DNA of 61,505 nucleotides, filler included, from Sluysia triapertura (GCA_046118255.1; 5 parts of 5 records of this genome joined end to end with filler, not necessarily neighbours in it), one strand, 5' to 3'; shown: positions 27,201 through 49,371, counted from the first letter of the whole stretch. Program-made: numbers and translations. Notes: generated by a model from the letters alone, not told the origin.

Positions 27201-29106
27201 TAACAACCAATACAAAATTCAAAAAATATTACGTCTTTTTAAATAACAAGTTACATACATGTATAAAAATTATTAAACAATTTTTTAATATTGATGTAAA
27301 GTCAAACTTTCTTGACTATATAAAAATTAAAAACCTTTAACTCATCTCGCTCACCGCAACATTTCATATATTTCTTAACTGCATTACTAGCTTCTTCTTT
27401 AACCAGATCAAGTTCTCTTCGTAAACTTTTGTTTTCACCATCTATTCTTTCTTTTTGATAGTCATTTGAAACATCATTTTGCTTTATATTTTTCCTTGAT
27501 TCATATTTTACTTCATCCAAATGATTACATAGCTAAAAATGCAAAAAATCTCGTACATTATTCATTAAATAATTAATTTATTGATTAATTAAAATATTTT
27601 AGTAAACCTTTATGTTAATTTACAATTCTGATTATTAATATCGATATAATTATGAGTGGTATGTTATCGTGAGTTCTTTTGACATTTAAAGTCTTAAAAA
27701 GTATTTAAAAGCTTCCAAATAACTATAAAACAATTATTTTCCAAAAAAGAAAATAAAAATTACAACAAAAGAAAATAAGCTTCTAAAAATAGAATTATAT
27801 TTATATTCTATTGGCTGATGACTAGTATATAAACTAGCATAGGTTCAATTTTCAACACAATAATTATTCATTCAATTCATTTTCATCACAAATTAAAATT
27901 TATCAAGATATTTTTGCTGACGCCATATTGATACAAGAAAATTATTTAGTTTTTACAATATTTGTTGGATTCAATCTGTGATAAGTTTATTTCTGATATT
28001 TCAATTAGTATTTGGTAAGCTTTGGTAAACTAAAAATTTGAAATATAAAATCCAAATAAATTCGATTAAGACTCTATCAAAACCTCTATCTAATGAGGGG
28101 AACATTTTTAAATTAATATTAATTGTAACAGAAAATCAAAGATTCATAGAATTCTGTTTATAAATTTATCGATATTTTTTTATAACTGAATTTCATAATT
28201 ATTTCCTTCTCTGTTAAATAGTTAATTTAATTAATACATCTTCTTTAGTTTATTTATTTTAATTATATTAGTTGAATAGGTTGATAATTAAATAATTAAA
28301 GAAACACTTCAATTTAATTAATAAATTAAGTTTTCATTAGAATTAACTTGTGTTAGTTACAGAAATATCTTTACGACATAAGACGTTTACCCTAACGGGA
28401 CCATGCTCAATTTTATTTTAAGACTTAAGAAAATATTAATGAATTTAAAATTATATCTACTATAAATAAACAAACTTTTGAATCGCATACTTTTGTTTCA
28501 TTAGTATTATTAAATTGGTTGAATAGTTTTGGTGCTTAGGTAGGTTCTGAAGGTGTTGCGATTAAATGGTCCATATGGCTTATAAGATGCAGTTTATAAA
28601 TTTTAAATATATTATTATCATTATATAATTATAATTATTATTTGTTGTTATTAAGCAAAACAACAGAAACACAAAAAATTTATAGCTCTTTAGATTTATT
28701 TCATAATTTCAATCTGGATCCAAATTAAACATGAAATCGGAAGAAATCGCCAAAAGAAATTGATTCGTATAAGAGACAATAAATTTAATCCAAATAATCG
28801 AATAATTATGCAATATTAGAAGTACTCGAATCTCGTTAATTTCGTTAATTTCGCACTGGAGTCATGTGCTCCCGCCGAAAATTTTCCCCACAAAGAACAG
28901 TGCATTTTATGACATCAAGTATCGAATCTAAACGACTAATTAAATTTACTCGCTTATTAAAGCACAAAGGCTGCCTAACCGATTTAAGTATGCTAACGAT
29001 ATTCTTATATTCGTTTTCTAATCTATGAATTTGCTCTATGGTTTTTAATTTTATATGTATACTTTTTTGAACGTGCATGCTGCTCGTTACAAATATAATT
29101 GTTGTG

Positions 29107-34569: not shown

Positions 34570-37176
34570 ATTTAAAGAAAACCGATGACAACAATTTATT
34601 AATTTCACCTACATAGACAGATATTTGCTACGAAAAAAATGCATAAGATATTAATTGTTGCAAAAAGCATTCTCTGAAATAATGTGCAGCTCTTTACAGA
34701 AATTAATTTAGGTAATTCGTTCTGTTAAATAAAAATTGCTTTATACTTTGGAAGTATAAATACTTTTACGAAATTGTTTAAAGCTTCTAATGGTTTTAAC
34801 TTCGATAAATCATATTACTTCTGCGTTTTCCGAATTATATTCTCTTTTAACAATATATTCTCTTATATACCTTCTATTGGAAATGCCCCATTTTTCCTAG
34901 GAATATTATAAATAAGCTAGTAAACAATGCTCGTAATTTATATTCTAATAATATTAGCTACTATTACTATTATACCACCATTAAATTGAATTTAGCACTT
35001 TATTCGTATTTATTTATTAATCTTGGATATCTTAAACTTATAAACGAAGAAGAATATTTATTTTGGTCATTTGCATATTTCATTTTTCTTCACTAAATGA
35101 ATAATATTGTTAATTATCACTGTTAATTACTTAAAATGAAATAATTTCAAAAATTACAAATATTGCCATTTGCTTTATTTATCTGAATTTTAAAATATAT
35201 NNNNNNNNNNNNNNNNNNNNNNNNNNNNNNNNNNNNNNNNNNNNTTAATTAATTAANNNNNNNNNNNNNNNNNNNNNNNNNNNNNNNNNNNNNNNNNNNN
35301 TGATTAAAATTTTATAAGTATTTATAGTTGTTTTAGTCTGACCTTGGTCAGACTAAAACAAAACAAATATTTAATTTTAAAAATATAATTTGAATTTTAG
35401 TCGATAATATTAATTAAAAATTTTAAATTAAAAGAATTACAATCGATAATTTTAATATTAGTTTTGTTAAATTTAAATTAAAAGAATTAAAAGAATTACC
35501 TTAAAACTATTTCCAAAATGATCCAGAAATCATTAAGATATAAATTACAAATATAAAATCAATATAAAATCAATAAAGTTGTAGAACAATAATGCACAAA
35601 GTTGTAGTTACATATAAAGTTTATTCAATAAAATTATCATTATTTTTAACAGTTGAATCGTATCAATGTTCAATGTAGTTAGTCACATCACAACACTATT
35701 AATAGTCTGTGCATTATTTTGCAACTGTTTTATACATTGTACTGATCATAAAATGTTTAAAGAATTTTCATTATATCCACTAGCAACCCAAAAGAAACAC
35801 ATTCTTTTACTATATTGATGTTTTTCAAGATATCTTGTATTTCTATTATTTTTATCAATACAAAGCATCCTGATTTCAAATTGAATATGTTTTGTAAAGT
35901 TCATCTGACATATTTTTTGATGTATTGACTATTAAACTACTAAAAGAGAATTATTTAATACATTAATTTTACTAAATATATACAGAAATTTTTTTAAACT
36001 TTATTTTTCATAATAACATAAATAAATAAACGAAAAAAAGAGATAAATTACCATGAATTTTAGTATCACATTGTATTATGTAATTTTATACGAAAATTTT
36101 AATAAATGTATGCAAATTTATTTACTCTATAATTACAATATTACAAAATATTAAATTTTCTTTCAATAATATAAATATGTGTTTTAATTAATTACAATAA
36201 AATATTCTTATTAATTTATTATTGAATAATTCATCTGGGATTATATTTACATTATTAAATGATAAAAAATATAATACTAATAATGGATTTTATTTAAGTA
36301 AAATAGTATTTAATTTTAAATGTGCTTGGTTTAAGTTAAATGCTTTTAATTACATTTTTAATAGATTATTATTATCATTAGTTGTAGTAGCAACAATGTT
36401 TTTACTATTACAATATTTTCCGGATTATAAGGCCTTCTAGTTAAATTTTAAAAAAAGAGTTCTTGTTCAATTTTAATTCATGTTGTAGGATACCCATTAT
36501 ACTGCGGAAAATATTGTATTAGAAGTAAATTACTAATTATTCACTAAAAGTGGTTATGATATAATTTAAATAATATTTATTTATTTATTTATTGTTAAAT
36601 TGAGTCAAAATTTTGTCTGGTCACTTTTTACTGGCTGAAAATTATTATGACTAAATAAAAGCTACGATTTGAGTATTCTGTATAAAACAAGAGAAATCGG
36701 TTTCATTTTTTAAGAAGCAATACATTACTATGACAATGCAGAATTAAAGTCTTTATTGAGAATTATATGTCCCGTTTCAAGGTCACGTGTGATGTCAACA
36801 TAAAAATTTAAATTAAAATTAGACTTACGGTCTTTATTCGTAAATTTTAATTCCTAAAATTATTCTGATTGGTCACATAATTATGTAAACTGTCATAAAA
36901 CTTTAACTAATGTCGAATAATTTTAATAACCTAATTTAAGCAGTCTTTATCCGTGAAAAGATTGTGACATTGCAAATGAAAATACGACTAAAATTTGCTT
37001 TCTAATTCTCAATAAAATAAAATCTATTTCAATTTATGAGTCCAGTTTTTTCTATAGATTTTTTGGCTATATTATATTTCTGGTTATTTATTATTCTACA
37101 TTATAACTATATTCTCTATATAACTATTCTCTTATAACTATATATTATAAGAATAACTATAACTTGTTCTTATTTT

Positions 37177-37921
37177 TGTTAGGTTGTCATCACAATCCTA
37201 TAGAATAATGTAAAATATCATAATAACAATTTAAAATTATTTAAAACTATTTAAAAATCAATTAAAATCATATAAAATCATTTAAAACTATTTATTAATC
37301 TTTAAAATCACTTTAAAAATAATTATTTTCCGAAAAAGAAATTATTTTTGAAAAAATAAAATAAAATTTCGAAAAAAGAAAATTCGCTTCTAAAAATAGA
37401 ATAGAAGCTTATAGAATGTTCTAGAACATTCCACAGATTTTCATTGACTGATGACTGATTTATTTTACAGCGCCTTTGTTCGAGGAATTGTGAAATTTTG
37501 TAAAGTTTCACAGTCTTTGAACAATTTGGATAAAATCTATCGGACATTATCGGAAAAAAGGTATCCATTCATTGGTAATTTATATATTTATATGGTCAAT
37601 TTCAACTATAGAATATTTTTCTAAGTTGCCCAAATATTGAGGAGTAATATCAACTTAAAATATTTGAGTATTACATTAAACGCTCTCGGAGCTTGTATCT
37701 ATAAAATAATAATCGATTTATATTTATTATTTTGTCCTACTAATATTATTGTAAATAAAATACACGTTTTTTGTATTATTTAATTATTAAAGAATTTTTA
37801 AGCATAAATTATTAAAGTTCCTTGATACTTTTGAGCACTCGTTAAAACCCTATCCACGTAACATTTAGATAAACTACTTAGTTACTAGACGTTTACTAGA
37901 GCTGAACCCTGCTAAAAAATA
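37177..37921 (+). mobile_element. Solo-LTR-like element (about 745 bp) with HSE array
   Basis: Starts TGTTAGGTTGTCATCACAA. Carries GAAGCTTATAGAATGTTCTAGAACATTC at 37404-37431 and GACGTTTAC at 37888. TTTT flanks both sides (low-complexity TSD, right end inferred). Confidence 0.7.
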
Positions 37922-39699
37922 TTTTGCCGTTGGTTAAGAGTTAGAAAAACCACAGCATTTTTCTCTTATTATCTTTTGAATATATTTTTTGAAATATTTA
38001 TTTCTAATTTAAAAATTTTAAAGTTTATCAAAGTTCATAAGCAATTTATTTTACGAATTATGTTTATGTACAAAGGTATTATGGAAAGTTTGAGTATTAA
38101 TATTAATAATAATAATATTATTATTATTATTAATATTTGAGTTTTATCAAAGAATCAAATCAATAATTTGCCTCATATTTAGATGTTCATGGCAGATTAA
38201 TTAAAATAAATAAATAAAATATTTTTACAGAGGTGCAGTTTCAATCTTTGATATAGATTTTACTTTATTTCAATATTCTTTTGATCATAGCTATATATTT
38301 TTGCAAAGGAAAAAATTATATATTATAAATTATAAAATCACATTTTATTATAAAATTATAAAAAGCAAAATTCTTAAAATATTTATTAATATAAATTTTG
38401 AATTAAGTACTAAAAATAATCAAATTTATATGAACATTCTTACCTAATTTGAATATTTATTAATTATTATCAGAATTTCTACTCTATTAATCAAAATAAT
38501 ATAAAAAATAATAATTTTGTTCACTTAATATTTCAATAATAATTTAGAAATACTTTGTGTATTCTTTGCAATTAAAGCATTCAAAATAAGAACTCGATGA
38601 TCTATGAATAAAAGTATGAATTAAAATATGTGTTTGTTGCTTTTTCATTGTTTTATAAATTTCGAAGACAACGTAAAAAGTCAATACTCTTTCTGTAATA
38701 ATCCGGACTTATTAATTCTATTATTATACAGAATTAGTTTCATGTATTATAATAAGAAAAATAAAAACAAAAAACCAGATAGAAAAAGCAGTACAAAAAA
38801 TATAAATAAAATCACAGTAGGTAGAACTAAAAGAAAGTGACGATTTTTTTAATCATAATCCGTAAAGAAAATAATTCCTAAAATCTTTATAAGAAAACTT
38901 CTAAGTCGATAGTTGAAAAATGTTAACAATGCAAAATAAGGAAATAAATTATTTTGATTTGTGCTTGTTGTTGATTAAATTAAGCGGGGATGGCGGCTAA
39001 AAAGTAGTTAGACTTTGTATTGAAAACAATGGTATATCGATTGTAAATGTAAAATTTTGTTTTAATTAATCATGCAGTTTATACGCCATTTTGTTTATTT
39101 TCACATTTTAATTTTACTTTTTAATTTCAAGATCAAGAAACATGCTATAATATAGTGTTTAATGTTAGTTTTTTTTGATAAGGGATTAATTCCCATTCAT
39201 TATAAAATAAGTAGAGATAAAATGTTTAATCTTTGTCTATTATTTATCTATTTATTTCTATTTCTAATTGATAATTAAATTCTATTTATATTTTATTTTT
39301 CAATGAATTTAAATAAATAATAATATTAAAAATAAACTAAAACCTATACAGATTTTAAAAAATGTTTACAGAAATTTTCGCTTGAAGAAAAACATCAATT
39401 AAAATAATCAAAAAAATGAAAATACATTGTCATAAAACAAATAAAACATGTTCAGTTTTCTGTGTTTTTTTTATTTTTTATCAAAACACATTACTTATGA
39501 TTTCAAATTTCAATTTGTATTCATATTATATTTGTATTATATTACTTAATAGTCTGCGAATTACGATATAAATGGATATTAACAAATTTATCATATTTAA
39601 AAGAAAGGTTTAAAAAAGCTATTAAGTTACAATTCAATGGTTGACAGCAATTATTATATCAATTTTAATATTTGTCAGTTAAATTCATTATTATTATTA

Positions 39700-40463
39700 T
39701 AATTATTATTATTATTATTTTCATTAAATAGTTATTCTAAACGAAAAGCATTTTATACCGCTACAAAAATAAATGTTTATATCATAACTGTATGGAAGCA
39801 CACATTTTCACATAAAAATTACAAACACACCTCATCACATACGAGCATTTCTTACATAAACAAAACACTAAATAAATTACTTTAGTCATTTAGAAAACAA
39901 GCATAGTCATTGTATATAATTATCATTAGTTATATTTATTGTTATCATAACCTCTATTATAATAATAACTCATAATAATTTCTATTAGCATTGTTACATT
40001 AAACCATTAATAATTCTATTTTTATTTTAATTTCACAATTGTTATCATTATACTTTTATTATTATTACAACTATGTTATTTTTCACTTCCTTTTTATTTG
40101 TGTAATTATGTATACTTGTTTGCGCTTCTGTATGCGTGTTCATTCTGTTTCACTATTCTTTTTATATTTTATTACTTGATGTACTTTCAAAACATGAATG
40201 ATCAAACTCATATTTATGAAGAGATATTGTATGCATATCTGGTTTGTGGAATGACGTTTGTTTTTACAACAATACGAAGTGTACACATTATTGATTTTTT
40301 TGAAATCTTACCAGCTTTAGATTGTTGGAATATGACACTAATATTTTATCTTGTGTATTTAATATTTGATTTAAAATTCGAATATCAAATAACACCTAAT
40401 TATATAAATTTTGGTTTATTTATATCAACATTGTATGCTCACTATGATATTACGTGGTTTTAA
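39700..40463 (+). repeat. Dispersed repeat with a hydrophobic ORF; homologous to about 56560-57320 on the minus strand
   Basis: ACAAACACACC...TCTTACATAAACAAA..ACTAAATAAATTACT (39821-39880) aligns with the reverse complement of 57060-57120. Both continue into ATT-rich hydrophobic-coding sequence. Confidence 0.55.
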
Positions 40464-40699
40464 TTATTATCAGCTTCGTATTCTTGTTTTTTGCTTAAAT
40501 CAGATCTCATATCATATTATTCATATTATTAGCTAACTCAATCTAAGTAAGAATATTATTTCTTAGAAGTAGTCCATTAAACACAAAAATTTTAAAGAAT
40601 AATACAATTGATCGTTTATGGTTATAATCGTTTAAGTGATTCGGGCAGCTGCTACTGAAATATACTAAAATATACTAAGTGACAAAAGTAAAATGCATG

Positions 40700-42060
40700 G
40701 GAAACGAACAAGTTGGAGAAATTAATGATGATGTCAAAGTAAACCTATCTCAAAGCTGTGTTATAGTAGGAGATTTGTCAAGAAATTCTAATCAGTTGAA
40801 AATTTTCGAGTAAAAAGTTAATTACGACAATGAACACACTATAGATTATGTAGATCGTGTTATTAAATCAACAAATAAAGAACTGGTTAATGATAGTACG
40901 TATTCAAGATTTCGTCAAATCCACATTAAACCTTCAGCAATACCAATATTAAAAAAATGGGAAATTTTCTATCATCGTGGAGCATGTTATCAGAAGTAAT
41001 ATCCTCTGGACTATTACAAAACTAGCAATAAATGAAATGAAACAACAGGACGTAATGTTTGAAGTTGCTTATTATCATAATTTGACAGCATTAAAAAAGC
41101 ATTTCGACGAATCGGAACTTTTCTATATGAAGTAAAAATGATCGGACATAGTTTCTGAAATGGAAAAGCATCACATATTTTCTAATATCGTATTTATTGT
41201 AGCTGCCAGTCAACAACTTCTAAATGATGTAGTAAAACGCTGGAATTAACAAAAATCGTTACTTGAAGACGTTTGTGATATTTTATTAGATCATTCAAAA
41301 GGAGATGGATTTCAACATTGCGTTAATTATTTACGCGATCAACAATATCAATTAGGAACTTTAAATCGCTTATCAGAAAAGGAACGCTTTCAAAAACAAT
41401 TAGGAAGTTTTCCAACTTGTGACAAATTATCATTACGAAGTTTTTACAAGATTAACTGAACTACATTTAGTGGTAAAAAATATAATTCATATTATGCAAA
41501 AGGTGAAACAGTGACAATTAAAAGAAAACAGTTTCTTGAAATTGCTAATTTGGCGAATTAAAACAAAAGCAAAAAACCATTATGGACGTTAAAACTACTG
41601 CTATTTAATTAACGAAGTCGCTGATATTTCCTGATAATATTAAAAGAATTGCATTTAGTAATATTGAATTGTTGAAGCAGGATTTATCTCAAGTTCATCG
41701 AGCTTATAAAAAAATGAAGCCAATTACTAAAAAGAAAATTATGTATCTGAAAGTTTATTTTACCACCATTACTTGCAAATAAAATAAAAATTATAGAAAA
41801 TTAATATTAATTAATCTCCTGAAGTAATTATTAAAAAAATCAATAATTCAACTACAAAATATTGTTAATCTTCATTTACGACAATTTAATAAATTTATGT
41901 TTAATCGACAACGTTCAAAAAAATCACGGCCACCAATTAAATAACCTCATTCTAATTGTACTCCTGAACCTAAAGCAAACAGGTCTCGTTCTCATGATGC
42001 TAAAATAGAACATGAAGGAATGTTAAAAAAGAAATTAAATCATGATACTTGTTTCTATTG
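40700..42060 (+). pseudogene. Intronless RhoGEF (DH domain; Ephexin/SGEF-like) pseudogene
   Basis: Frames give EMKQQDVMFEV, EKHHIFSNI, SQQLLNDV..RW, EDVCDILLDH, YLRDQQYQLGTLNRL, PTCDKLSLRSF and RLTELHLVVKNI. Multiple stops and frameshifts; no introns evident. Confidence 0.8.
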
Positions 42061-43199
42061 AATGTCTAGTTTGAGGTATGGACGTTTTATATTTTTTTTC
42101 CTGTTATTAATACCTCCACATGTTTAATATTTGTGTCAACAATTTTAGAATTGAGCTTAAAGTAAACATGTTTTTTCAATTAAAATCTTTTATATCTATT
42201 TAAAAAAAACTAAAAAGTAAAATTTCATTAATGTTTCACCATAATTTTTGTTTAATTTTATGATAAAAATAAAGAAACTTCTATTCTTAGATAAAATGAT
42301 AAATTTAAGAAAAAAAGGCATACATATTTGTAGAATATGATGTGTTTAATAAAACATTTCACCTGATAACATTGTATGTTATAAAATTTGAAGTTTTTCA
42401 TTCGTAATTTTTGATATATATATTTTTCATAAACGTTATAAATAAGTAAATGTTTAATGTCGAGACAGATAGTACTATTTTCTTGATAATGGAAAGTTTG
42501 CATTTAGATAATCACAACAAATGTTTAACTTTATCAAATTTTATAATTTTATTTTTTAAAAATATTACATTAATTTTTTCACTTTTTAATTTACTGATAA
42601 GATATAAGACATATTTATTATGATGTAAAATAAACTTAATATTTTTTAATAGTTAATATTAAACCTTTAATTTTCTATCTTATCAGTTAGTGATTCGTAG
42701 CTAGATCTAAACTAAATGAAACAATTTTGTCTAACACTATTTTTGTGACACTATATTTAACAATAATAAATATTTTATTATTTAAACAAATAACATTTTC
42801 AAATAATTTAAATATTATTTAAGGATTATTATATCTTTATTATTATTATTATTATATTAATATTATAAGTCGTTCAAGTTATTGTACACATTTTTCAACC
42901 ATTTTGATAATACCACGAATATTTGCATAATTATAACATCCTACATTGTATACATTCATTTTTACATCGAATTCACCTATTATATGAATTCTTATTTTTC
43001 TTTTTAAATCTCCATATATTATTCTCAAATCATTTTAATTATTGGTTATTAATTTTACAAAATAACTATTAAATAATAAACTAAGTTTTTTAAAATACAA
43101 CAAATCTGAAAACACAATTTCAACATTATGTATTAATTGTGGATCTCTTTGAGGCAATGGTTTTTCTAACTCTCAACCTACAGCAAAATATTTTAAACA

Positions 43200-43967
43200 T
43201 GTTTCGGTTACTGTAAACGTCATACAACGTATTGTTGGCGTCTCTGCAACTAATAAGTTAATAATTACCTTAAGAGTTACTTAATGATGAAAGGTCTAAT
43301 ACTCAGTAAGTAAGGGTTTAACTTATCGTATAACAAATGAAACCAAAAATTATAAATCCACAATTTCTATTAAAAAATGAAATAATACAAAAATTGGCTA
43401 AAAAATCGAGAAAATGATAGAATTAAGGTCAAAAAATTAAATTTAATAAAAGTTCGTTAAAGTTAAAACTAATAGTTATTATTTAACTTATAAGTAAAAG
43501 ATATTTTTTTCTGTATTTTACCCCTCATTGTATCGGAGAATACCTTACAACTTTATTAAAAATTTGGATTTAAGTAAATTTTATATTAATTTTCTTATGC
43601 AAAATAAAATAAAAATAAAATGCTCTTAACACAGAACTGGTACAGAATTCGTAGATTATCCAAAAGCTGCATCTTTAAAATAATATTAAATCCAAGATGG
43701 CGACAATTAAATTGGCGATTTGCATTATATTGATTCTAGGTCATATACTAGTCATCAGCCAATGAAAATCGATGGAATGTTCTAGAACATTCTAGAAGCT
43801 TCTAATCTATTTTTAGAAGCTAGTTTCCTTTTTAAGAAATTTTTTCTTTTTTTGGAAAATAATTATTTTTAAAGTTATTTTAAAGATTTATAAAGCACTT
43901 TAATTGATTTTTAAATAATTTTAAAGTATCTTTTGTGATTTTAATGAGTTGTAATGACAACCTAGCA
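43200..43967 (-). mobile_element. Solo-LTR-like element (about 768 bp) with a perfect six-unit HSE
   Basis: Minus strand reads TGCTAGGTTGTCATTACAAC...GACGTTTACAGTAACCGAAACA. Flanks are consistent with a 4-bp TSD (ACAT or AACA) allowing a 1-bp indel. Confidence 0.75.
43743..43802 (-). promoter_or_regulatory. Heat-shock element array, CCAAT box and TATA-like motif
   Basis: GAA-TG-TTC-TA-GAA-CA-TTC-TA-GAA-GC-TTC (43775-43802) is six alternating nGAAn pentamers. On the minus strand it is followed by ATTGG and TATAT. Confidence 0.75.
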
Positions 43968-46288
43968 ACATTATTTGTTACAATTTACATCTTGCAGTAT
44001 GTGAATGGCACTGTTTAATATTTGCGTTTGTGTACAATTGACACGAATCTTTATGTTTATTTTCTAACGATTTTATAACATTTTGCATGAGTAATAAAAT
44101 GACTTACTCTGTATGTCAAATACATTCTTTTTTAATATTAAGACTATTTAAAATTTTGTTTATTTTAAGGTTTCTGTTACTTCTCAAGCTATAAGAAGTT
44201 TTAGGATTTTCTTTCTCAATACTATTTTTCTTAGATTCAAATATTGTGCTATTAATTCAGAATTTAAATACTTAAATGCTTATCAGTCAAATCTGGTTGA
44301 GTTCTGGAGATATTTTAATTTATAAACAAACGAGAGTCAATGCACACTGAATAATAACAGTGAAATTTAACATTTAAAAAATAGTTTGTATAAATCCTGT
44401 GAAAAGGATTTGTAATAAATGATTTTGCGGTATCAGTATTAAATTATGATAAGGGAAAACTTTATTGTAGTAAAGATTTTATATTTAAAACTACGTAAAT
44501 TAATTATTAATAAAAATGAACTCTCTAACAATTTATATTGTATATTTAATAGGGTACAAATGAAAATATAAGAATTAATAAGTATATTGCGGAGAAATAT
44601 TGACTAATTCTTCAAATAATAATAATTTATTAATGATTTTTCGGGAAACTATTATAAGTTTCGAAATCAATTACAAAAATGTATTTTAAGTAGATTTTAC
44701 AGGGATATTTTTTATATCCAAAACTTAATATAATAAACTAATATAGTATTTTTTGAAAAGGAAAATTCGGTAAGTTTTATATTCAATTTTCCAAAATTTG
44801 TAAACTCTTTAAAGATTATGACACTCTTGTCCACTCTTCGTCCGAATAAAATATTTATAAAAATTGGTTGAAGTTGTCAAAAATATATTGTGTGAAATTT
44901 GTAAATTTTATGTGTATTTATACCGTATTTAACTAGCCTTGGCCAGATTAAAACAAAATATTTATTTTAACAAAAATAATTCGATTTTAAATTTTAATTT
45001 TAATTAATTTTAAAAATATTAAAGTTTATATTTAATTAATAAAATTACTCACGTTATTTTATGGCCTTTAGATCCAATTATAATAAAGCAAGAATTAATA
45101 ATTTAGGTTCAAAATTAATAATAAAAATCCAAAAATATACAATAAATCAATTAAAAATCAATAATTTTGTTACTAAAATAGTCATTATTATAATATATAA
45201 CACGCTTTAATACACAAATTAATCTTAATCATTGTACTTTGTACGTCTTCAAAAACATCAACAACTATTCAGAATAACCTACACTTAATATAACGCGTAC
45301 CTACCAATAACCAATTATCGTTTTTGTCTAAAGATTTGTTCCCGAAATTAGTTTAGTTTTTAATAAAGAGTTAATGTTTATTTTGTTATGTTTTCTTGTG
45401 TGTCAATACCCGAATAAAATCAGTAAAAGTTTCGGCAAGCCTTAAGTTCACTTTACATTACAGTTTAAAATTAACTTCAAAAATTTTAATACTATCAAAA
45501 AGTCATAGTTTGTCTAGGAGTATTACTGAATTCATAAAAATAAGTAGTGAACCGGCAAACCATAATCTTCTAGCTTCTAACTCCTAACTCATTTCCATTA
45601 TGTACATGGGCGATTCCTTTATTTTCGTCGCAGCTTTAAGTGGCTAACCAAGCAAACATAAGTAATATTCACAAAAAATGTACTAAATCTTCTAATAATA
45701 CAACTTTAACTCATCATACATTTTTTAAACAAATCCAATAACACATGCAATATGTATCTCAAGAAACATAAAAATATCTAATACCCATTACGTTTCAGCA
45801 AACACAAGCGCAAACAATCAATAAAACTAACAATGTTTAAACAGACATTCTACAAGAAATGCAAAAATGAATCAGTTTCACATCATGAAAACCATTTACA
45901 GGTTCAAGTCACCGTCCTCAGACAAAGAATACACCGTCCTCACCATTGTTACAAAAGATATTCCTACTAAACCAAGTCCACTAAGATATATTCTATGGTC
46001 CGTAAACCTGAACCTATTAAAACCGTCACTTATATATACTTAGGCCTGCAAAACAACATTCCAAGTGACAACCTCTAGAAGATAGATCAGATAATCCACC
46101 AAAAAAAACCAGTAAATTGTCAAATTATGTTTAACATAAGATGCCGCTCATATGTGATTAAAACAGTCAACCAAATCTTAAACCATTCAACAATAAGGTT
46201 ACACTTAAAAAATTCACTTTCTTGACTCAAACAATTTATGTTAAAGCCATACATAACAGAATTCGTTAAATTCATTTCATATTCATAT

Positions 46289-47992
46289 TTATATCAATGG
46301 GTTTAATACATTAAATATCATTTTATCATTACGCCTGTCATGAATTGTAAATAAAAATACATTGCAGGTCGTCAATGTCTCTCTTTTGATTTTAATACAC
46401 TTAGTCTCTTTAACTTTGTGATCTTTTAACGGTTTACTATTCTTCTTATCTTTAACTATTAATTTAAAAGATTGTATTCCTAAATTATTGATAATTTTGT
46501 TTACATTTATTTTCATAACATAATATAAAACTAATTCATTATTTAACATGAACCAAAGAAATTCAGAAGTAATTACACTAAATTCTATTAACAAAACTTT
46601 TAATGCTATAGACTCAAAAGAGAAGTAGACAGTCCTAGTATTAAGAGTTGTATCTTGTACCTTCGTTTCTCTTGTAATCCCATTGCGCTTCATTGATCCA
46701 GATGTTATGCTTGTGAACTGAAACCAATGTTAATACGTATATAAAATTAAAGCTTACATTAACGAACTGGCTATAGTAAAAATTTTTACAGACAAACTTT
46801 GTAAATTCTCTGTAGACTGCTTCATTCCTCAATAACCGACTTAGTAGTAAATTACGGAGGCAGACACATTGTTCGATTCGATGTTGATTTCGATCTTTTT
46901 TGTTATACATATTACATGGATTGGATCCTTCGCTCCTGTTAAATCTTTGATCACGATGTGGTAAATGGAATAATGCATTATTCTCTGATATTACTTGATC
47001 ACAAATATTGTAGGCAAGGTATTGTTTTGATTCGACAATTTTAGTTACTGCCACGTCAACTTCTAAATTTCTAATTATAAATCGAATGTTTTGTATCTTG
47101 AATAGATCGTTATTACTAATAGTGGCATACCATTGATCATTGGTGAGTTCCTCGTTAGAAATTTTGTCGGGTCGTATAACTTGAGAATGTATCATAGAAA
47201 CTTGTTTTAGATCTAATAGAATCTTTAATAATAGATTCACGTAACTATCCACGGTCGAAAATAAGTATGTTATATCGTTATGCCATGAATGTTCTCCGTT
47301 CATCATTTTTATTTCACGTTTAACCTTGTAGAATTATAAAGTTGTTGGAACGGCAATAAATAAGAAACGAATATTAATGACAAGGCAATTCGTTAATTTG
47401 TGAGATCGGATCAAATCTAACAATGTATTAAATAAATACGAATAATCATAAACAAGTTCGTAGTTATGACTATTTGAAATTTCTGACATGGGGTTTATAG
47501 AAGGAAATATATTCTGAATCATTATAGGTTCTTGTATCGAAAATTTTATATCTATAGATGATTCTATATGATTATAACCACTATGCGGGTTAAGGCAAGT
47601 AGGTTGTAGTTCATTATTTAACATATCGGAAGGTACAAACGACATCAAATGATTTTCTACACTATGAAACTAACATTTATTATAGAATTTCTGGAGATCG
47701 TTTCGGAGTTTATTATCATATTTAAATCACTAATAGTTGAATTAGAATGTTCTTTATTGGTGATATTAAGAATGTTATAATCACTGAGATAAGAAAATAA
47801 ATCCTGTAATATTACTTTGTTAAACGCCGAGAAGGTCTCTAGGAAATTAGCACCGATCATCAATTCAATCATTTCGCATTTAAGACGTAATTCGTTTTTC
47901 TTTTTCTTTTTTAATTGCCACGAAAGTTTTTTATTTTTAATAGTAACACAGCTTTCACTACTAATTATGAAAAATTTACATAATATTACCAT
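46289..47992 (-). CDS. Hypothetical multi-exon gene or recent pseudogene of unknown function
   Basis: Four adjacent ORFs. A canonical 40-nt intron GTAAG...TTTCAG (46757-46718) joins the 221-aa and 134-aa ORFs in frame. The other junctions are less clean. Confidence 0.5.
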
Positions 47993-49371
47993 ATTTTCAG
48001 TTCACAATTTTTGCGTGTTGTTATTGGTCATCCAATCGAGGCCTTTAAAAATTGATACATTCTAAATTAGGTCTCGATTGGATGAGATAGGTAATATTTT
48101 GATTACTAATTAATTTGAAGCCCAACTGATAACTGACCATCATCAGCGCTGACAGTCTAATGAAAAATGTGACATAGACTGTCAACACTGGTGATGGCAG
48201 TAACCAGANNNNNNNNNNNNNNNNNNNNNNNNNNNNNNNNNNNNNNNNNNNNTTAATTAATTAANNNNNNNNNNNNNNNNNNNNNNNNNNNNNNNNNNNN
48301 NNNNNNNNTTAAATTCATTTAAAACTTCAATGCTTGACGAAATATCATTTGTACAATGAATATCGCTTCTTTCATAGTTGCTTTCAAATTCGTCAACTGC
48401 AAATTTAATTTCAATATTAAATCAATAAGCATTAGAACATAATCGACTGTACCTTTTCTCAAAATGCTTGTTGAACATCATTTTTGCCTTTGTATTTGCC
48501 ATATTTACATATAGTATATTTTATTATTAGCTTACTTTTTTGAACAAACGCATTTAAGAAAAGAAAAAAAAGACATTTTTATATAAATATATTCAATTTT
48601 TGACAAAATAAATTCTTAGCTTAAAAATTAAATCATTTTCTGTTCTACTTCATTTATTGTGCGGTTTATGCTTCAAGCTAAATTCCATATAACCTAAAGT
48701 AAGTAATACTTGAATCCTAATAGAAAATGTCTCTTAGCTTTCATTATGTGTATTTCAACAAAATCTTAATCTAGATAATATAAGATAAGGATAAAAGTAA
48801 AACTTGTGATGGCAACGGTGAAGAAAAGAACTACGATGTTGTTAAATTAGAATTAGTGTTAACTAAATTGATCATAATGAATTTGATATAAATGAGTTTA
48901 TATTGAAATTTGTAATTTGTTATTTGTGTATTAAGTTATGCGTAAAGAAGTGAATTTTGAGTGTCTTTTTATGTTGGTGCTGCAATAAAGTCATTGTTAA
49001 TAGTTGAAACACCACATACATTAAATTAAATAATCAAATATTCAGTGAAATAAACAGTGATAATAATGTTGTTGATGGTTACTATCTAAGAAGCCTAAAA
49101 GTAATGAAAGCAATAAATTTGCTATGCTGATATTTTGTTGCGTTATATATTTCCAAAAATAAAAGAATGTTTTAACAAGAAAATTATATTTCTGTTTAAA
49201 AATCTATAATTATATTATATGGAAAATTATTTATATATGATAATAAAATAAGGAAGTGATAAAAGTTTTAGTTGGACTTCCTTTTTAATTTGATTCAATA
49301 TCATGGATTATTCAAACGAAAGTAGTCAACGTTTAATTTTATTAATTAAATATTGTTACATTTTATTACAG

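What the first reader, a model, noticed from the sequence alone, without database searches (positions are those of the whole stretch)
43200..43967. Solo-LTR-like family carrying phased heat-shock element arrays
Seen: four related elements at ~12.7-13.3 kb (-), 27662-28397, 37177-37921 and 43200-43967 (-). The three with resolvable ends are 736-768 bp and share subterminal GACGTTTAC; three start T(G/A)(T/C)TAGGTTGTCAT. Three carry 5-6 alternating nGAAn units just upstream of an ATTGG-like box; the 27.7 kb copy lacks the array. Established: three or more alternating nGAAn units bind HSF, and plant ONSEN LTRs use HSEs for heat activation. Inference: a stress-inducible retroelement that has spread HSF-responsive promoters, about four per 60 kb here.
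Basis: partly seen in the sequence, partly recalled or inferred. Interest (0 to 1): 0.72.

Follow-up and report, generated by a model that had tools for sequence, protein, structure and literature searches.

The report
Dispersed repeat carrying heat-shock elements
Two inverted copies of a roughly 800-base non-coding repeat in a very AT-rich eukaryotic genome share a near-perfect heat-shock-factor binding array next to a CCAAT box. This looks like one more transposon-type repeat carrying a heat-shock promoter, but neither the claim that it is a solo LTR nor that it responds to heat could be shown.

Summary
The sequence observation holds. The piece has two copies: A at 37177-37952 (+) and B at 43158-43967 (-). 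Both start with TG(T/C)TAGGTTGTCAT.

Each then has:
- a 10-bp phased A/T-tract array
- an HSE array: six perfect alternating nGAAn units in B, five of six in A
- an ATTGG box in B, ATTGA in A
- a 3' block running from GACGTTTAC to ...GAAAAACCA

Arrays of four or more units are expected 0.006 times in this piece by chance.

The copies are homologous only in a 5' module of about 225-290 nt (about 88-90% identity in its conserved core) and a 3' module of about 65 nt (81%). The 424 and 521 nt between them are at noise level.

The solo-LTR reading is not established. The ends are TG...CA, but there is no target-site duplication, terminal inverted repeat, primer-binding site or polypurine tract. No retroelement protein domain occurs anywhere in the 12.9 kb. 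The copies flank a RhoGEF-like exon.

My best reading is a mobile-element-derived repeat of unresolved class whose conserved part is a heat-shock-type promoter or enhancer. Transposons carrying HSEs are already known (ONSEN, Macrostomum LTR elements, Caenorhabditis Helitrons, DIRS-1).

The parts
37177..37952 (+). Copy A of the repeat (776 nt), whole unit
   Evidence: Aligned to copy B; BLAST; ends fixed.
43158..43967 (-). Copy B of the repeat (810 nt), whole unit, inverted relative to A
   Evidence: (inverted pairs I1-I4).
37177..37463 (+). Copy A 5' module, homologous to B 43967-43743: end motif, A/T-tract array, HSE array and ATTGA box
   Evidence: Global alignment score 111 against 24 +/- 3.9 for shuffles, z = 22. 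About 88-90% identity over 37240-37457.
43743..43967 (-). Copy B 5' module
   Evidence: (I1: 111 nt, 86%).
37229..37318 (+). Copy A: 10-bp periodic A/T-tract array (unit ATTTAAAATC, 8.8 copies) upstream of the HSE
   Evidence: Tandem Repeats Finder.
43865..43926 (-). Copy B: the same 10/21-bp periodic A/T-tract array (5.7 copies of the 10-mer)
   Evidence: Tandem Repeats Finder.
37403..37432 (.). Copy A HSE array: six 5-bp positions, five perfect (one reads TTA instead of TTC); four contiguous perfect units at 37413-37432
43774..43803 (.). Copy B HSE array: six perfect alternating nGAAn/nTTCn units
   Evidence: No run of 5 or more units in 1000 shuffles.
37436..37456 (+). Copy A conserved block GATTTTCATTGACTGATGACT; the CCAAT-type box is degenerate here (ATTGA at 37443-37447)
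   Evidence: 0 chance matches in 100 shuffles.
43750..43770 (-). Copy B conserved block with an intact inverted CCAAT box (CCAAT on the + strand at 43759-43763), 10 nt from the HSE array
37464..37887 (+). Copy A middle, 424 nt, not detectably homologous to B's middle or to anything else in the piece
   Evidence: z = 1.5; z = 0.2-1.25.
43222..43742 (-). Copy B middle, 521 nt, not detectably homologous to A's middle
37888..37952 (+). Copy A 3' module, from GACGTTTAC to AGAGTTAGAAAAACCA
   Evidence: 81% identity to B, z = 18; identical terminal 16-mer.
43158..43221 (-). Copy B 3' module
   Evidence: (I4: 37 nt, 92%).

Best explanation
A and B are two old copies, probably from different subfamilies, of an interspersed non-coding repeat derived from a mobile element. 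Its class is unresolved; a solo LTR is the leading candidate but is unproven.

The part conserved between the copies is a heat-shock-type promoter or enhancer module with three components:
- a 10-bp phased A/T-tract array, likely bent and nucleosome-poor DNA
- 5-6 contiguous alternating nGAAn units, enough for two cooperating HSF trimers
- a CCAAT (Y-box) site for NF-Y 10 nt further on

A 65-nt 3' terminal block is also conserved.

Proposed mechanism: on heat or proteotoxic stress, HSF trimers bind the array. With NF-Y and the open A/T-tract DNA, they recruit Pol II to start transcription in or next to the element. This would give the parent element stress-timed expression. Dispersed copies could also act as heat-responsive enhancers for neighbouring genes, here a RhoGEF-like gene lying between the two copies.

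Shown: the sequence, the homology pattern and the non-randomness of the HSE. Inferred: mobility, HSF and NF-Y binding, the direction of transcription, and any effect on neighbouring genes.
For: - HSE arrays of 4 perfect contiguous units (A) and 6 (B) against 0.006 expected per piece, found only inside the two copies.
- Both copies have the same sharp outer ends. The flanks align at 47-57%, which is noise. The terminal motifs are found only at the two copies.
- Homology is confined to the 5' module (z = 22; about 88-90% over 37240-37457) and the 3' module (z = 18; 81%). The middle is at noise. Uniform neutral decay of one insertion would not give that pattern. Descent from diverged subfamilies that kept only their cis-acting parts would.
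- No conserved ORF: the 57-aa ORF that begins at the conserved ATG in A stops after 4 codons in B.
- No known RNA family and no tRNA.
- Precedents in which a transposon-borne HSE confers heat activation: Macrostomum LTR elements and ONSEN (PMC12801592), Caenorhabditis Helitrons (PMC6927752).
Against: - I could examine only two copies, and they sit 5.2 kb apart in inverted orientation, so mobility is inferred rather than shown.
- There is no target-site duplication, terminal inverted repeat, PBS, PPT or poly(A) tail.
- There is no transposon protein domain in the piece.
- The family was not found in any searchable collection.
- Within the 5' module the HSE block (89.5%) is no better conserved than the adjacent A/T-tract region (88%). 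Selection on the HSE itself is therefore not demonstrated.
- The CCAAT box is mutated in A.
- There are no expression or binding data.
Confidence: 0.55

Rival explanations
1. One reading: both copies are solo LTRs of a heat-activated LTR retrotransposon like ONSEN, with the HSE in U3. This is a special case of the best explanation.
For: - TG...CA termini in both copies.
- A size of 776-810 nt is typical of an LTR.
- In the reverse orientation the layout would be a variable region, then CCAAT, HSE and a TATA-like site, then the conserved end. This resembles a variable U3 followed by a conserved promoter and R-U5.
- HSE-bearing LTRs are validated in plants and in a flatworm (PMC12801592).
Against: - No 4-6 bp target-site duplication in either copy, and no terminal inverted repeat beyond TG/CA.
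- No PBS or PPT next to either copy.
- The copies are inverted, and the interval between them holds a RhoGEF-like exon and no RT, IN or gag.
- No retroelement domain anywhere in the 12.9 kb.
- The ORF cluster upstream of B in the right orientation (46.3-48.0 kb, -) has no Pfam match. Its 230-aa member has no relative among 1.84 billion proteins.
- LTR copies of one family normally align along their whole length. These do not.
Confidence: 0.3
2. A non-autonomous DNA element, rolling-circle (Helitron-like) or of another class without TIRs or TSDs, whose conserved ends flank unrelated cargo. The HSE would lie in a terminal region, as in Caenorhabditis Helitrons. This is also a special case of the best explanation.
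For: - Conserved ends with an unrelated middle, no TSD and no TIR.
- Read on the opposite strand, the element ends in a small hairpin followed directly by CTAA (A) or CTAG (B), which fits CTRR.
- Helitron-borne HSEs are documented (PMC6927752).
Against: - On that strand the 5' end is TGG, not TC.
- Both copies share two more bases (CA) after the CTRR, and neither junction shows an A/T target.
- The hairpin has only 4-8 weak pairs: -3.2 to -3.8 kcal/mol, z = -1.7 to -2.3.
Confidence: 0.15
3. Not mobile. It would be a small host family of heat-inducible transcription units, for example non-coding RNA genes, or a locally duplicated promoter. The promoter and 3'-end signals would be conserved while the transcribed body evolves freely.
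For: - The conserved part looks like an hsp70-type promoter: an HSE next to CCAAT, with TATA-like sites on either side.
- No transposon hallmark was found.
- The two copies are close together and inverted, as a local duplication could be.
Against: - No conserved ORF or RNA family.
- No HSP-type domain nearby.
- About 200 nt upstream of the HSE, including a sharply bounded 14-nt end motif, is conserved as well. That is unusual for a promoter duplicate but expected for an element terminus.
Confidence: 0.2
4. A chance resemblance in AT-rich, low-complexity DNA.
For: The piece is about 76% A+T, and many weak AT-rich matches appear in BLAST.
Against: - Module alignments score z = 22 and z = 18 against shuffles.
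- 16- to 21-nt motifs have 0-0.01 chance matches.
- The HSE runs were never reached in shuffles.
Confidence: 0.01

Closest known systems
ONSEN (ATCOPIA78) LTRs of Arabidopsis and other Brassicaceae
   Same: A repeat with TG...CA ends carrying canonical HSEs, which in ONSEN give HSF-dependent heat activation (as summarised in PMC12801592).
   Different: - ONSEN is a defined Ty1/copia element with paired LTRs, TSDs and gag-pol. None of these could be shown here.
- The array here is longer (5-6 contiguous units) and is paired with a CCAAT box and a phased A/T-tract array.
- The host is an unidentified AT-rich eukaryote whose RhoGEF-like exon best matches animal ARHGEF16.
HSE-containing Ty3/Mdg4 and Ty1/Copia LTR retrotransposons of the flatworm Macrostomum lignano (PMC12801592)
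   Same: Those elements carry one to four canonical HSEs in the LTR upstream of the start site, and the HSEs are needed for heat induction in reporters. The mechanism I propose here is the same.
   Different: Those families were defined from full-length elements with RT phylogeny. Here there is only a non-coding unit with no internal domain, no TSD, and homology limited to its two ends.
HSE-bearing Helitrons of Caenorhabditis (PMC6927752)
   Same: A dispersed repeat supplies HSF sites near host genes. Non-autonomous copies have conserved ends, no TSD and no TIR.
   Different: - Canonical Helitron ends (5' TC, an A^T target, a strong 3' hairpin) are not met here.
- Helitron HSEs occur as large tandem clusters of tens to hundreds. 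Here there is one compact array per copy.
DIRS-1 of Dictyostelium: inverted terminal repeats with promoter activity (PMC3950715 and PMC4482531, listed). That the repeats contain a heat-shock promoter is from my own knowledge of the 1980s literature and was not read here.
   Same: Two inverted copies of an HSE-bearing repeat about 5 kb apart in a genome of about 22% GC, with no TSD.
   Different: - The interval holds a RhoGEF-like exon and no RT, RNase H, methyltransferase or tyrosine recombinase.
- The two repeats are not homologous through their middles.
Cellular hsp70-type promoters: an HSE next to a CCAAT box bound by NF-Y (own knowledge of vertebrate hsp70 promoters)
   Same: A contiguous HSE array with a CCAAT box about one helical turn away and TATA-like sequences nearby.
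   Different: - No heat-shock protein gene or any conserved ORF follows.
- The module sits inside a repeat with defined ends.

Membership tests
Heat-shock element (HSF binding site) | At least three contiguous, alternating, 5-bp-phased nGAAn/nTTCn units | tested here: met
   B has 6 perfect units (43774-43803). A has 4 perfect contiguous units within 5 of 6 (37403-37432). Runs of 4 or more units are expected 0.006 times per piece.
Heat-shock element (HSF binding site) | HSF binding and heat-dependent transcription | not testable with these tools
No ChIP data are available.
Solo LTR of an LTR retrotransposon | 5'-TG...CA-3' termini | tested here: met
   Both copies run from TG(T/C)TAGG to AAACCA.
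Solo LTR of an LTR retrotransposon | 4-6 bp target-site duplication flanking the LTR | tested here: not met
   No 4-10 bp direct repeat sits at the junctions. Scanning within 5 nt of each junction gave nothing for A and one offset, likely chance 4-mer (TTGC) for B. Decay of old copies could hide a TSD, so this is weak negative evidence.
Solo LTR of an LTR retrotransposon | A family with full-length members: two direct LTRs around gag-pol, with PBS and PPT | tested here: not met
   Within the piece the two copies are inverted, no PBS or PPT is at the flanks, and there is no RT, IN, gag, PR or RNase H domain.
Solo LTR of an LTR retrotransposon | Copies of one family align along the whole LTR | tested here: not met
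   The middle 424 and 521 nt are at noise level.
Helitron (non-autonomous) | 5'-TC and 3'-CTRR ends, insertion between A and T | tested here: not met
   On the opposite strand the 3' end reads CTAA or CTAG, but two further shared bases (CA) follow. The 5' end is TGG, and no A^T junction is present.
Helitron (non-autonomous) | Stable hairpin shortly before the 3' end | tested here: inconclusive
   A 4-8 bp hairpin is conserved in both copies but is weak: -3.8 and -3.2 kcal/mol, z = -2.3 and -1.7.
Helitron (non-autonomous) | No TIR and no TSD; conserved ends with variable interior | tested here: met
DIRS-like retroelement with inverted terminal repeats | An inverted repeat pair enclosing RT/RNase H and tyrosine recombinase genes | tested here: not met
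   The inverted pair exists. The 5.2-kb interval, however, shows only a RhoGEF/DH-like exon (Pfam E = 2.6e-4; ARHGEF16 E = 0.02) and no RT or YR.
TIR DNA transposon / MITE | Terminal inverted repeats and a TSD | tested here: not met
   The local alignment of each 5' end against the reverse complement of its 3' end scores within about 1.5 SD of the shuffle mean. No TSD.
SINE | Pol III (tRNA, 7SL or 5S) head and an A-rich or simple-repeat tail | tested here: not met
   ARAGORN found no tRNA. Rfam gave no match, even at E up to 1. The 3' end is ...GAAAAACCA with no tail.
Penelope-like element pLTR | Hammerhead ribozyme motif in the repeat (own knowledge of the family) | tested here: not met
   No hammerhead or any other Rfam family at E up to 1 in either copy.

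The most novel reading that the evidence does not exclude
The unit is neither a decayed LTR nor a plain promoter copy. It is a bipartite mobile 'heat-shock cassette': a conserved HSE/CCAAT promoter end and a conserved 65-nt 3' end that together frame unrelated, exchangeable cargo. In effect it would be a family of heat-inducible transcription units, or a new class of TSD-less and TIR-less element, that places arbitrary sequence under HSF control and spreads it through the genome.
Probability: 0.1. Interest if true: 0.7.

Novelty: new member of a known kind. Interest (0 to 1): 0.38.

Why it matters
If the repeat is abundant and its arrays are bound by HSF, it would be another independent case of a mobile element taking over the heat-shock pathway. 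The validated cases so far are few: ONSEN in crucifers, LTR elements in one flatworm, and Helitrons in Caenorhabditis. It would also be a ready-made source of heat-responsive enhancers near host genes in this genome.

The bipartite conservation is useful in practice. It marks which roughly 290 + 65 nt the element lineage has kept, and so which segment to test in a reporter. As it stands, this is a well-supported sequence motif with an ordinary, already described interpretation and no functional evidence.

Tried and rejected

Searches for more copies or for the organism:
- The exact look-up of ten ORFs in the protein collection found none.
- The 33-nt HSE-plus-CCAAT pattern gave 0 hits in metagenomes.
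- The 20-nt HSE core gave 32 metagenome and 2 prokaryotic-MAG loci, but only the HSE itself matches.
- Three viral-contig scans gave 0 hits.
- The organism stays unidentified. The 221-aa ORF had no word-search hit. The 230-aa reading frame had no HMMER hit among 1.84 billion representatives. An ESM Atlas query with the RhoGEF exon gave only noise.

Readings rejected:
- Ciliate genetic code: no coherent long ORFs appear with TGA as the only stop.
- A and B as the inverted terminal repeats of one DIRS-like or foldback element: the interior has no RT or YR, and the repeats are not homologous through their middles.
- A nested insertion explaining the unrelated middles: neither middle matches anything else in the piece.
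- A conserved small ORF: none.
- A known RNA family or SINE: none.
- A bacterial-type promoter and terminator scan was run but is not meaningful for a eukaryote.

Its exons were searched separately, by reference.

Full report
**Setting.** Only positions 35301-48208 of the window are real sequence. The piece is about 24% G+C and has no CpG depletion (CpG observed/expected 1.08). It has no long ORF apart from a cluster at 46.3-48.0 kb. It is eukaryotic and does not use a ciliate genetic code. The organism could not be identified with the tools that were open.

**The observation.** The repeat finder reports inverted pairs joining 37218-37463 with 43743-43947, and 37916-37952 with 43158-43194. Aligning 37100-38000 (+) with 43120-44040 (-) shows two copies of one unit. 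Copy A is 37177-37952 (+) and copy B is 43158-43967 (-).

Homology starts sharply at TG(T/C)TAGGTTGTCAT and ends sharply at an identical 16-mer, AGAGTTAGAAAAACCA. The flanks outside align at 47-57%, which is the noise level for this composition. The end motifs and the 21-nt block after the HSE occur only at these two places, with 0-0.25 chance matches expected.

They stop 31 nt (A) and 42 nt (B) short of the 3' ends. The subterminal GACGTTTAC is present in both copies, at 37888-37896 (+) and 43213-43221 (-).

**The HSE arrays.**
- Copy B has six perfect alternating nGAAn/nTTCn units in strict 5-bp phase at 43774-43803.
- Copy A has six positions at 37403-37432. Five are perfect and one reads TTA; four of the perfect units are contiguous.
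- These are the only runs of three or more units in the 12.9 kb.
- First-order Markov shuffles of the piece give 0.16 runs of 3 or more units, 0.006 runs of 4 or more, and none of 5 or more in 1000 trials.
- Ten nucleotides beyond the array lies a conserved block, GATTTTCATTG(G/A)CTGATGACT. It holds an inverted CCAAT box, intact in B and ATTGA in A.
- Between the array and the 5' end lies a 10-bp periodic A/T-tract array, with 8.8 units in A and 5.7 in B.

The two copies are related only at their ends.
- The 5' module (A 37177-37463, B 43967-43743) aligns with z = 22 against shuffles. It is about 88-90% identical over 37240-37457.
- The 3' module (65 nt in A, 64 in B) aligns with z = 18 and 81% identity.
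- The 424 nt (A) and 521 nt (B) between them score z = 1.5 with simple scoring. With a composition-corrected matrix they score z = 0.2-1.25, and no better in reverse orientation.
- Neither middle matches anything else in the piece.

If both copies were insertions of one master sequence decaying neutrally, the middle should be about as similar as the ends. It is not. Two readings remain. The copies may descend from long-separated subfamilies that kept only their cis-acting parts. Alternatively, the element may be the kind whose ends frame unrelated cargo. Either way the HSE/CCAAT block lies in the retained part. It is no better conserved than the neighbouring A/T-tract region (89.5% against 88%), so selection on the HSE itself is not demonstrated.

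**Class of element.** TG...CA ends fit an LTR. Everything else I could test is negative or silent:
- No 4-10 bp target-site duplication lies at either junction. The scan within 5 nt of each junction found only one offset 4-mer (TTGC) in B, most likely chance.
- There is no terminal inverted repeat.
- There is no TGG-type primer-binding site after the 3' end of either copy and no polypurine tract shared before the 5' ends. There is no poly(A) or simple-repeat tail.
- There is no tRNA-like head, hammerhead or other Rfam family, even at E up to 1.
- No stop-free segment of 55 aa or more in the piece hits RT, integrase, gag, protease, RNase H, tyrosine recombinase, Rep/helicase or any heat-shock protein.

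The two copies are inverted and 5.2 kb apart, which resembles the inverted terminal repeats of a DIRS-like element. The interval, however, contains an exon with a Dbl-homology (RhoGEF) match at 41250-41456 (+): Pfam E = 2.6e-4, and the best PDB match is human ARHGEF16 at E = 0.02. It contains no retroelement gene. The copies therefore sit around or inside a host gene.

Read on the opposite strand, the unit ends in a small conserved hairpin followed by CTAA or CTAG. This recalls the Helitron CTRR end, and the absence of both TSD and TIR would fit too. Against that, the other end is TGG rather than TC, two further bases are shared after the CTRR, no A^T target is visible, and the hairpin is weak (-3.2 to -3.8 kcal/mol).

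I conclude that the class is unresolved. My estimates are solo LTR about 0.3, a Helitron-like or other non-autonomous DNA element about 0.15, and a host promoter or non-coding-gene family about 0.2. The remainder is a mobile-element origin of unknown type.

**Mechanism (inferred).** Six contiguous nGAAn units can hold two HSF trimers. This is established knowledge of HSF-HSE recognition. The same definition is used in PMC12801592 and PMC6927752.

A CCAAT box one helical turn away is the arrangement of vertebrate hsp70 promoters, where NF-Y helps keep the promoter accessible (my own knowledge). Phased A/T tracts are expected to disfavour nucleosomes. The module should therefore act as a heat- or proteotoxic-stress-inducible promoter or enhancer.

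The direction of transcription cannot be read from the sequence, because TATA-like strings exist on both sides of the array. Copy B, with its perfect array and intact CCAAT box, is the better candidate for activity. Copy A has one damaged unit and a mutated box.

**Comparison with what is known.** HSEs carried by transposons are documented in several cases:
- ONSEN in Brassicaceae, and four LTR-retrotransposon families in Macrostomum lignano. In the latter, mutating the HSEs abolished heat induction of an LTR reporter (PMC12801592).
- Helitrons that supply most of the HSEs in Caenorhabditis elegans and recruit genes into the heat-shock response (PMC6927752).
- DIRS-1 of Dictyostelium, whose inverted repeats are promoters (papers listed).

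This finding would be a further member of that kind, not a new kind. The unusual point is the bipartite conservation.

**Limits.**
- The family was not found in the metagenome, viral or prokaryotic collections. Only the 20-nt HSE core recurs there.
- Copy number, full-length partners, insertion polymorphism and heat-induced transcription are therefore all untested.

**Verdict.** The motif and the repeat are real and not due to chance. The LTR label and the heat activation are plausible but unproven. The concept is already known. Interest is moderate to low (0.38).

Noticed in passing
window 40814-41779 (+), best exon 41250-41456: Stop-free segments on the + strand, in a slightly GC-richer stretch between the two repeat copies. 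One matches the Dbl-homology (RhoGEF) domain (Pfam E = 2.6e-4; PDB ARHGEF16 E = 0.02). Neighbouring segments overlap in different frames, so this is either a gene with short introns or a decayed copy.
   Followed up: partly
window 46292-48001 (-): Four adjoining stop-free segments on the minus strand (114, 111, 230 and 146 aa) at about 30% GC. A 230-codon open frame is very unlikely by chance at this composition. Yet none of the four has a Pfam match, and the 230-aa one has no word-search hit and no HMMER hit among 1.84 billion representative proteins. It looks like an orphan or lineage-specific gene, or one broken by frameshifts.
   Followed up: partly
window 45301-46300: A strongly strand-asymmetric stretch: GC skew down to -0.35 and AT skew up to +0.21, with GC up to 32%. 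That makes it C- and A-rich on the + strand, unlike the rest of the piece. No explanation was sought.
   Followed up: no
loci L002, L004, L005, L007, L008, L013, L016, L020, L021, L024, L025, L032 (e.g. L016:793-2195): Twelve contigs from a few related JGI metagenome projects share a repeat of about 1-1.4 kb at 75-94% identity. It carries a five-unit HSE about 40-75 nt from the edge of homology. The repeat is unrelated to the window's family apart from the HSE core. It looks like an independent HSE-bearing interspersed repeat, presumably in a host eukaryote's genome. L016 has no long ORF.
   Followed up: partly
loci L010, L011, L014, L026, L030 (e.g. L026:4089-4407): Five contigs from another set of JGI metagenomes share a palindromic HSE-centred segment at 89-96% identity over 120-340 nt. 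L026 holds a perfect 66-nt palindrome around the HSE.
   Followed up: partly
window 38095-38147, 39687-39729, 42819-42866: Imperfect (ATT)n/(AAT)n microsatellites recur in the interval between the two copies and account for several of the weak repeat pairs.
   Followed up: no
window 35301-48208: CpG observed/expected is 1.08 at about 24% G+C, so there is no sign of CpG depletion by germline methylation in this stretch.
   Followed up: no
window 43700-43735 (copy B middle): Just inside B's non-conserved middle lie a second CCAAT box and an AAGATGGCGAC motif (+ strand 43696-43706). A has no counterpart of either. Their significance is unknown.
   Followed up: no
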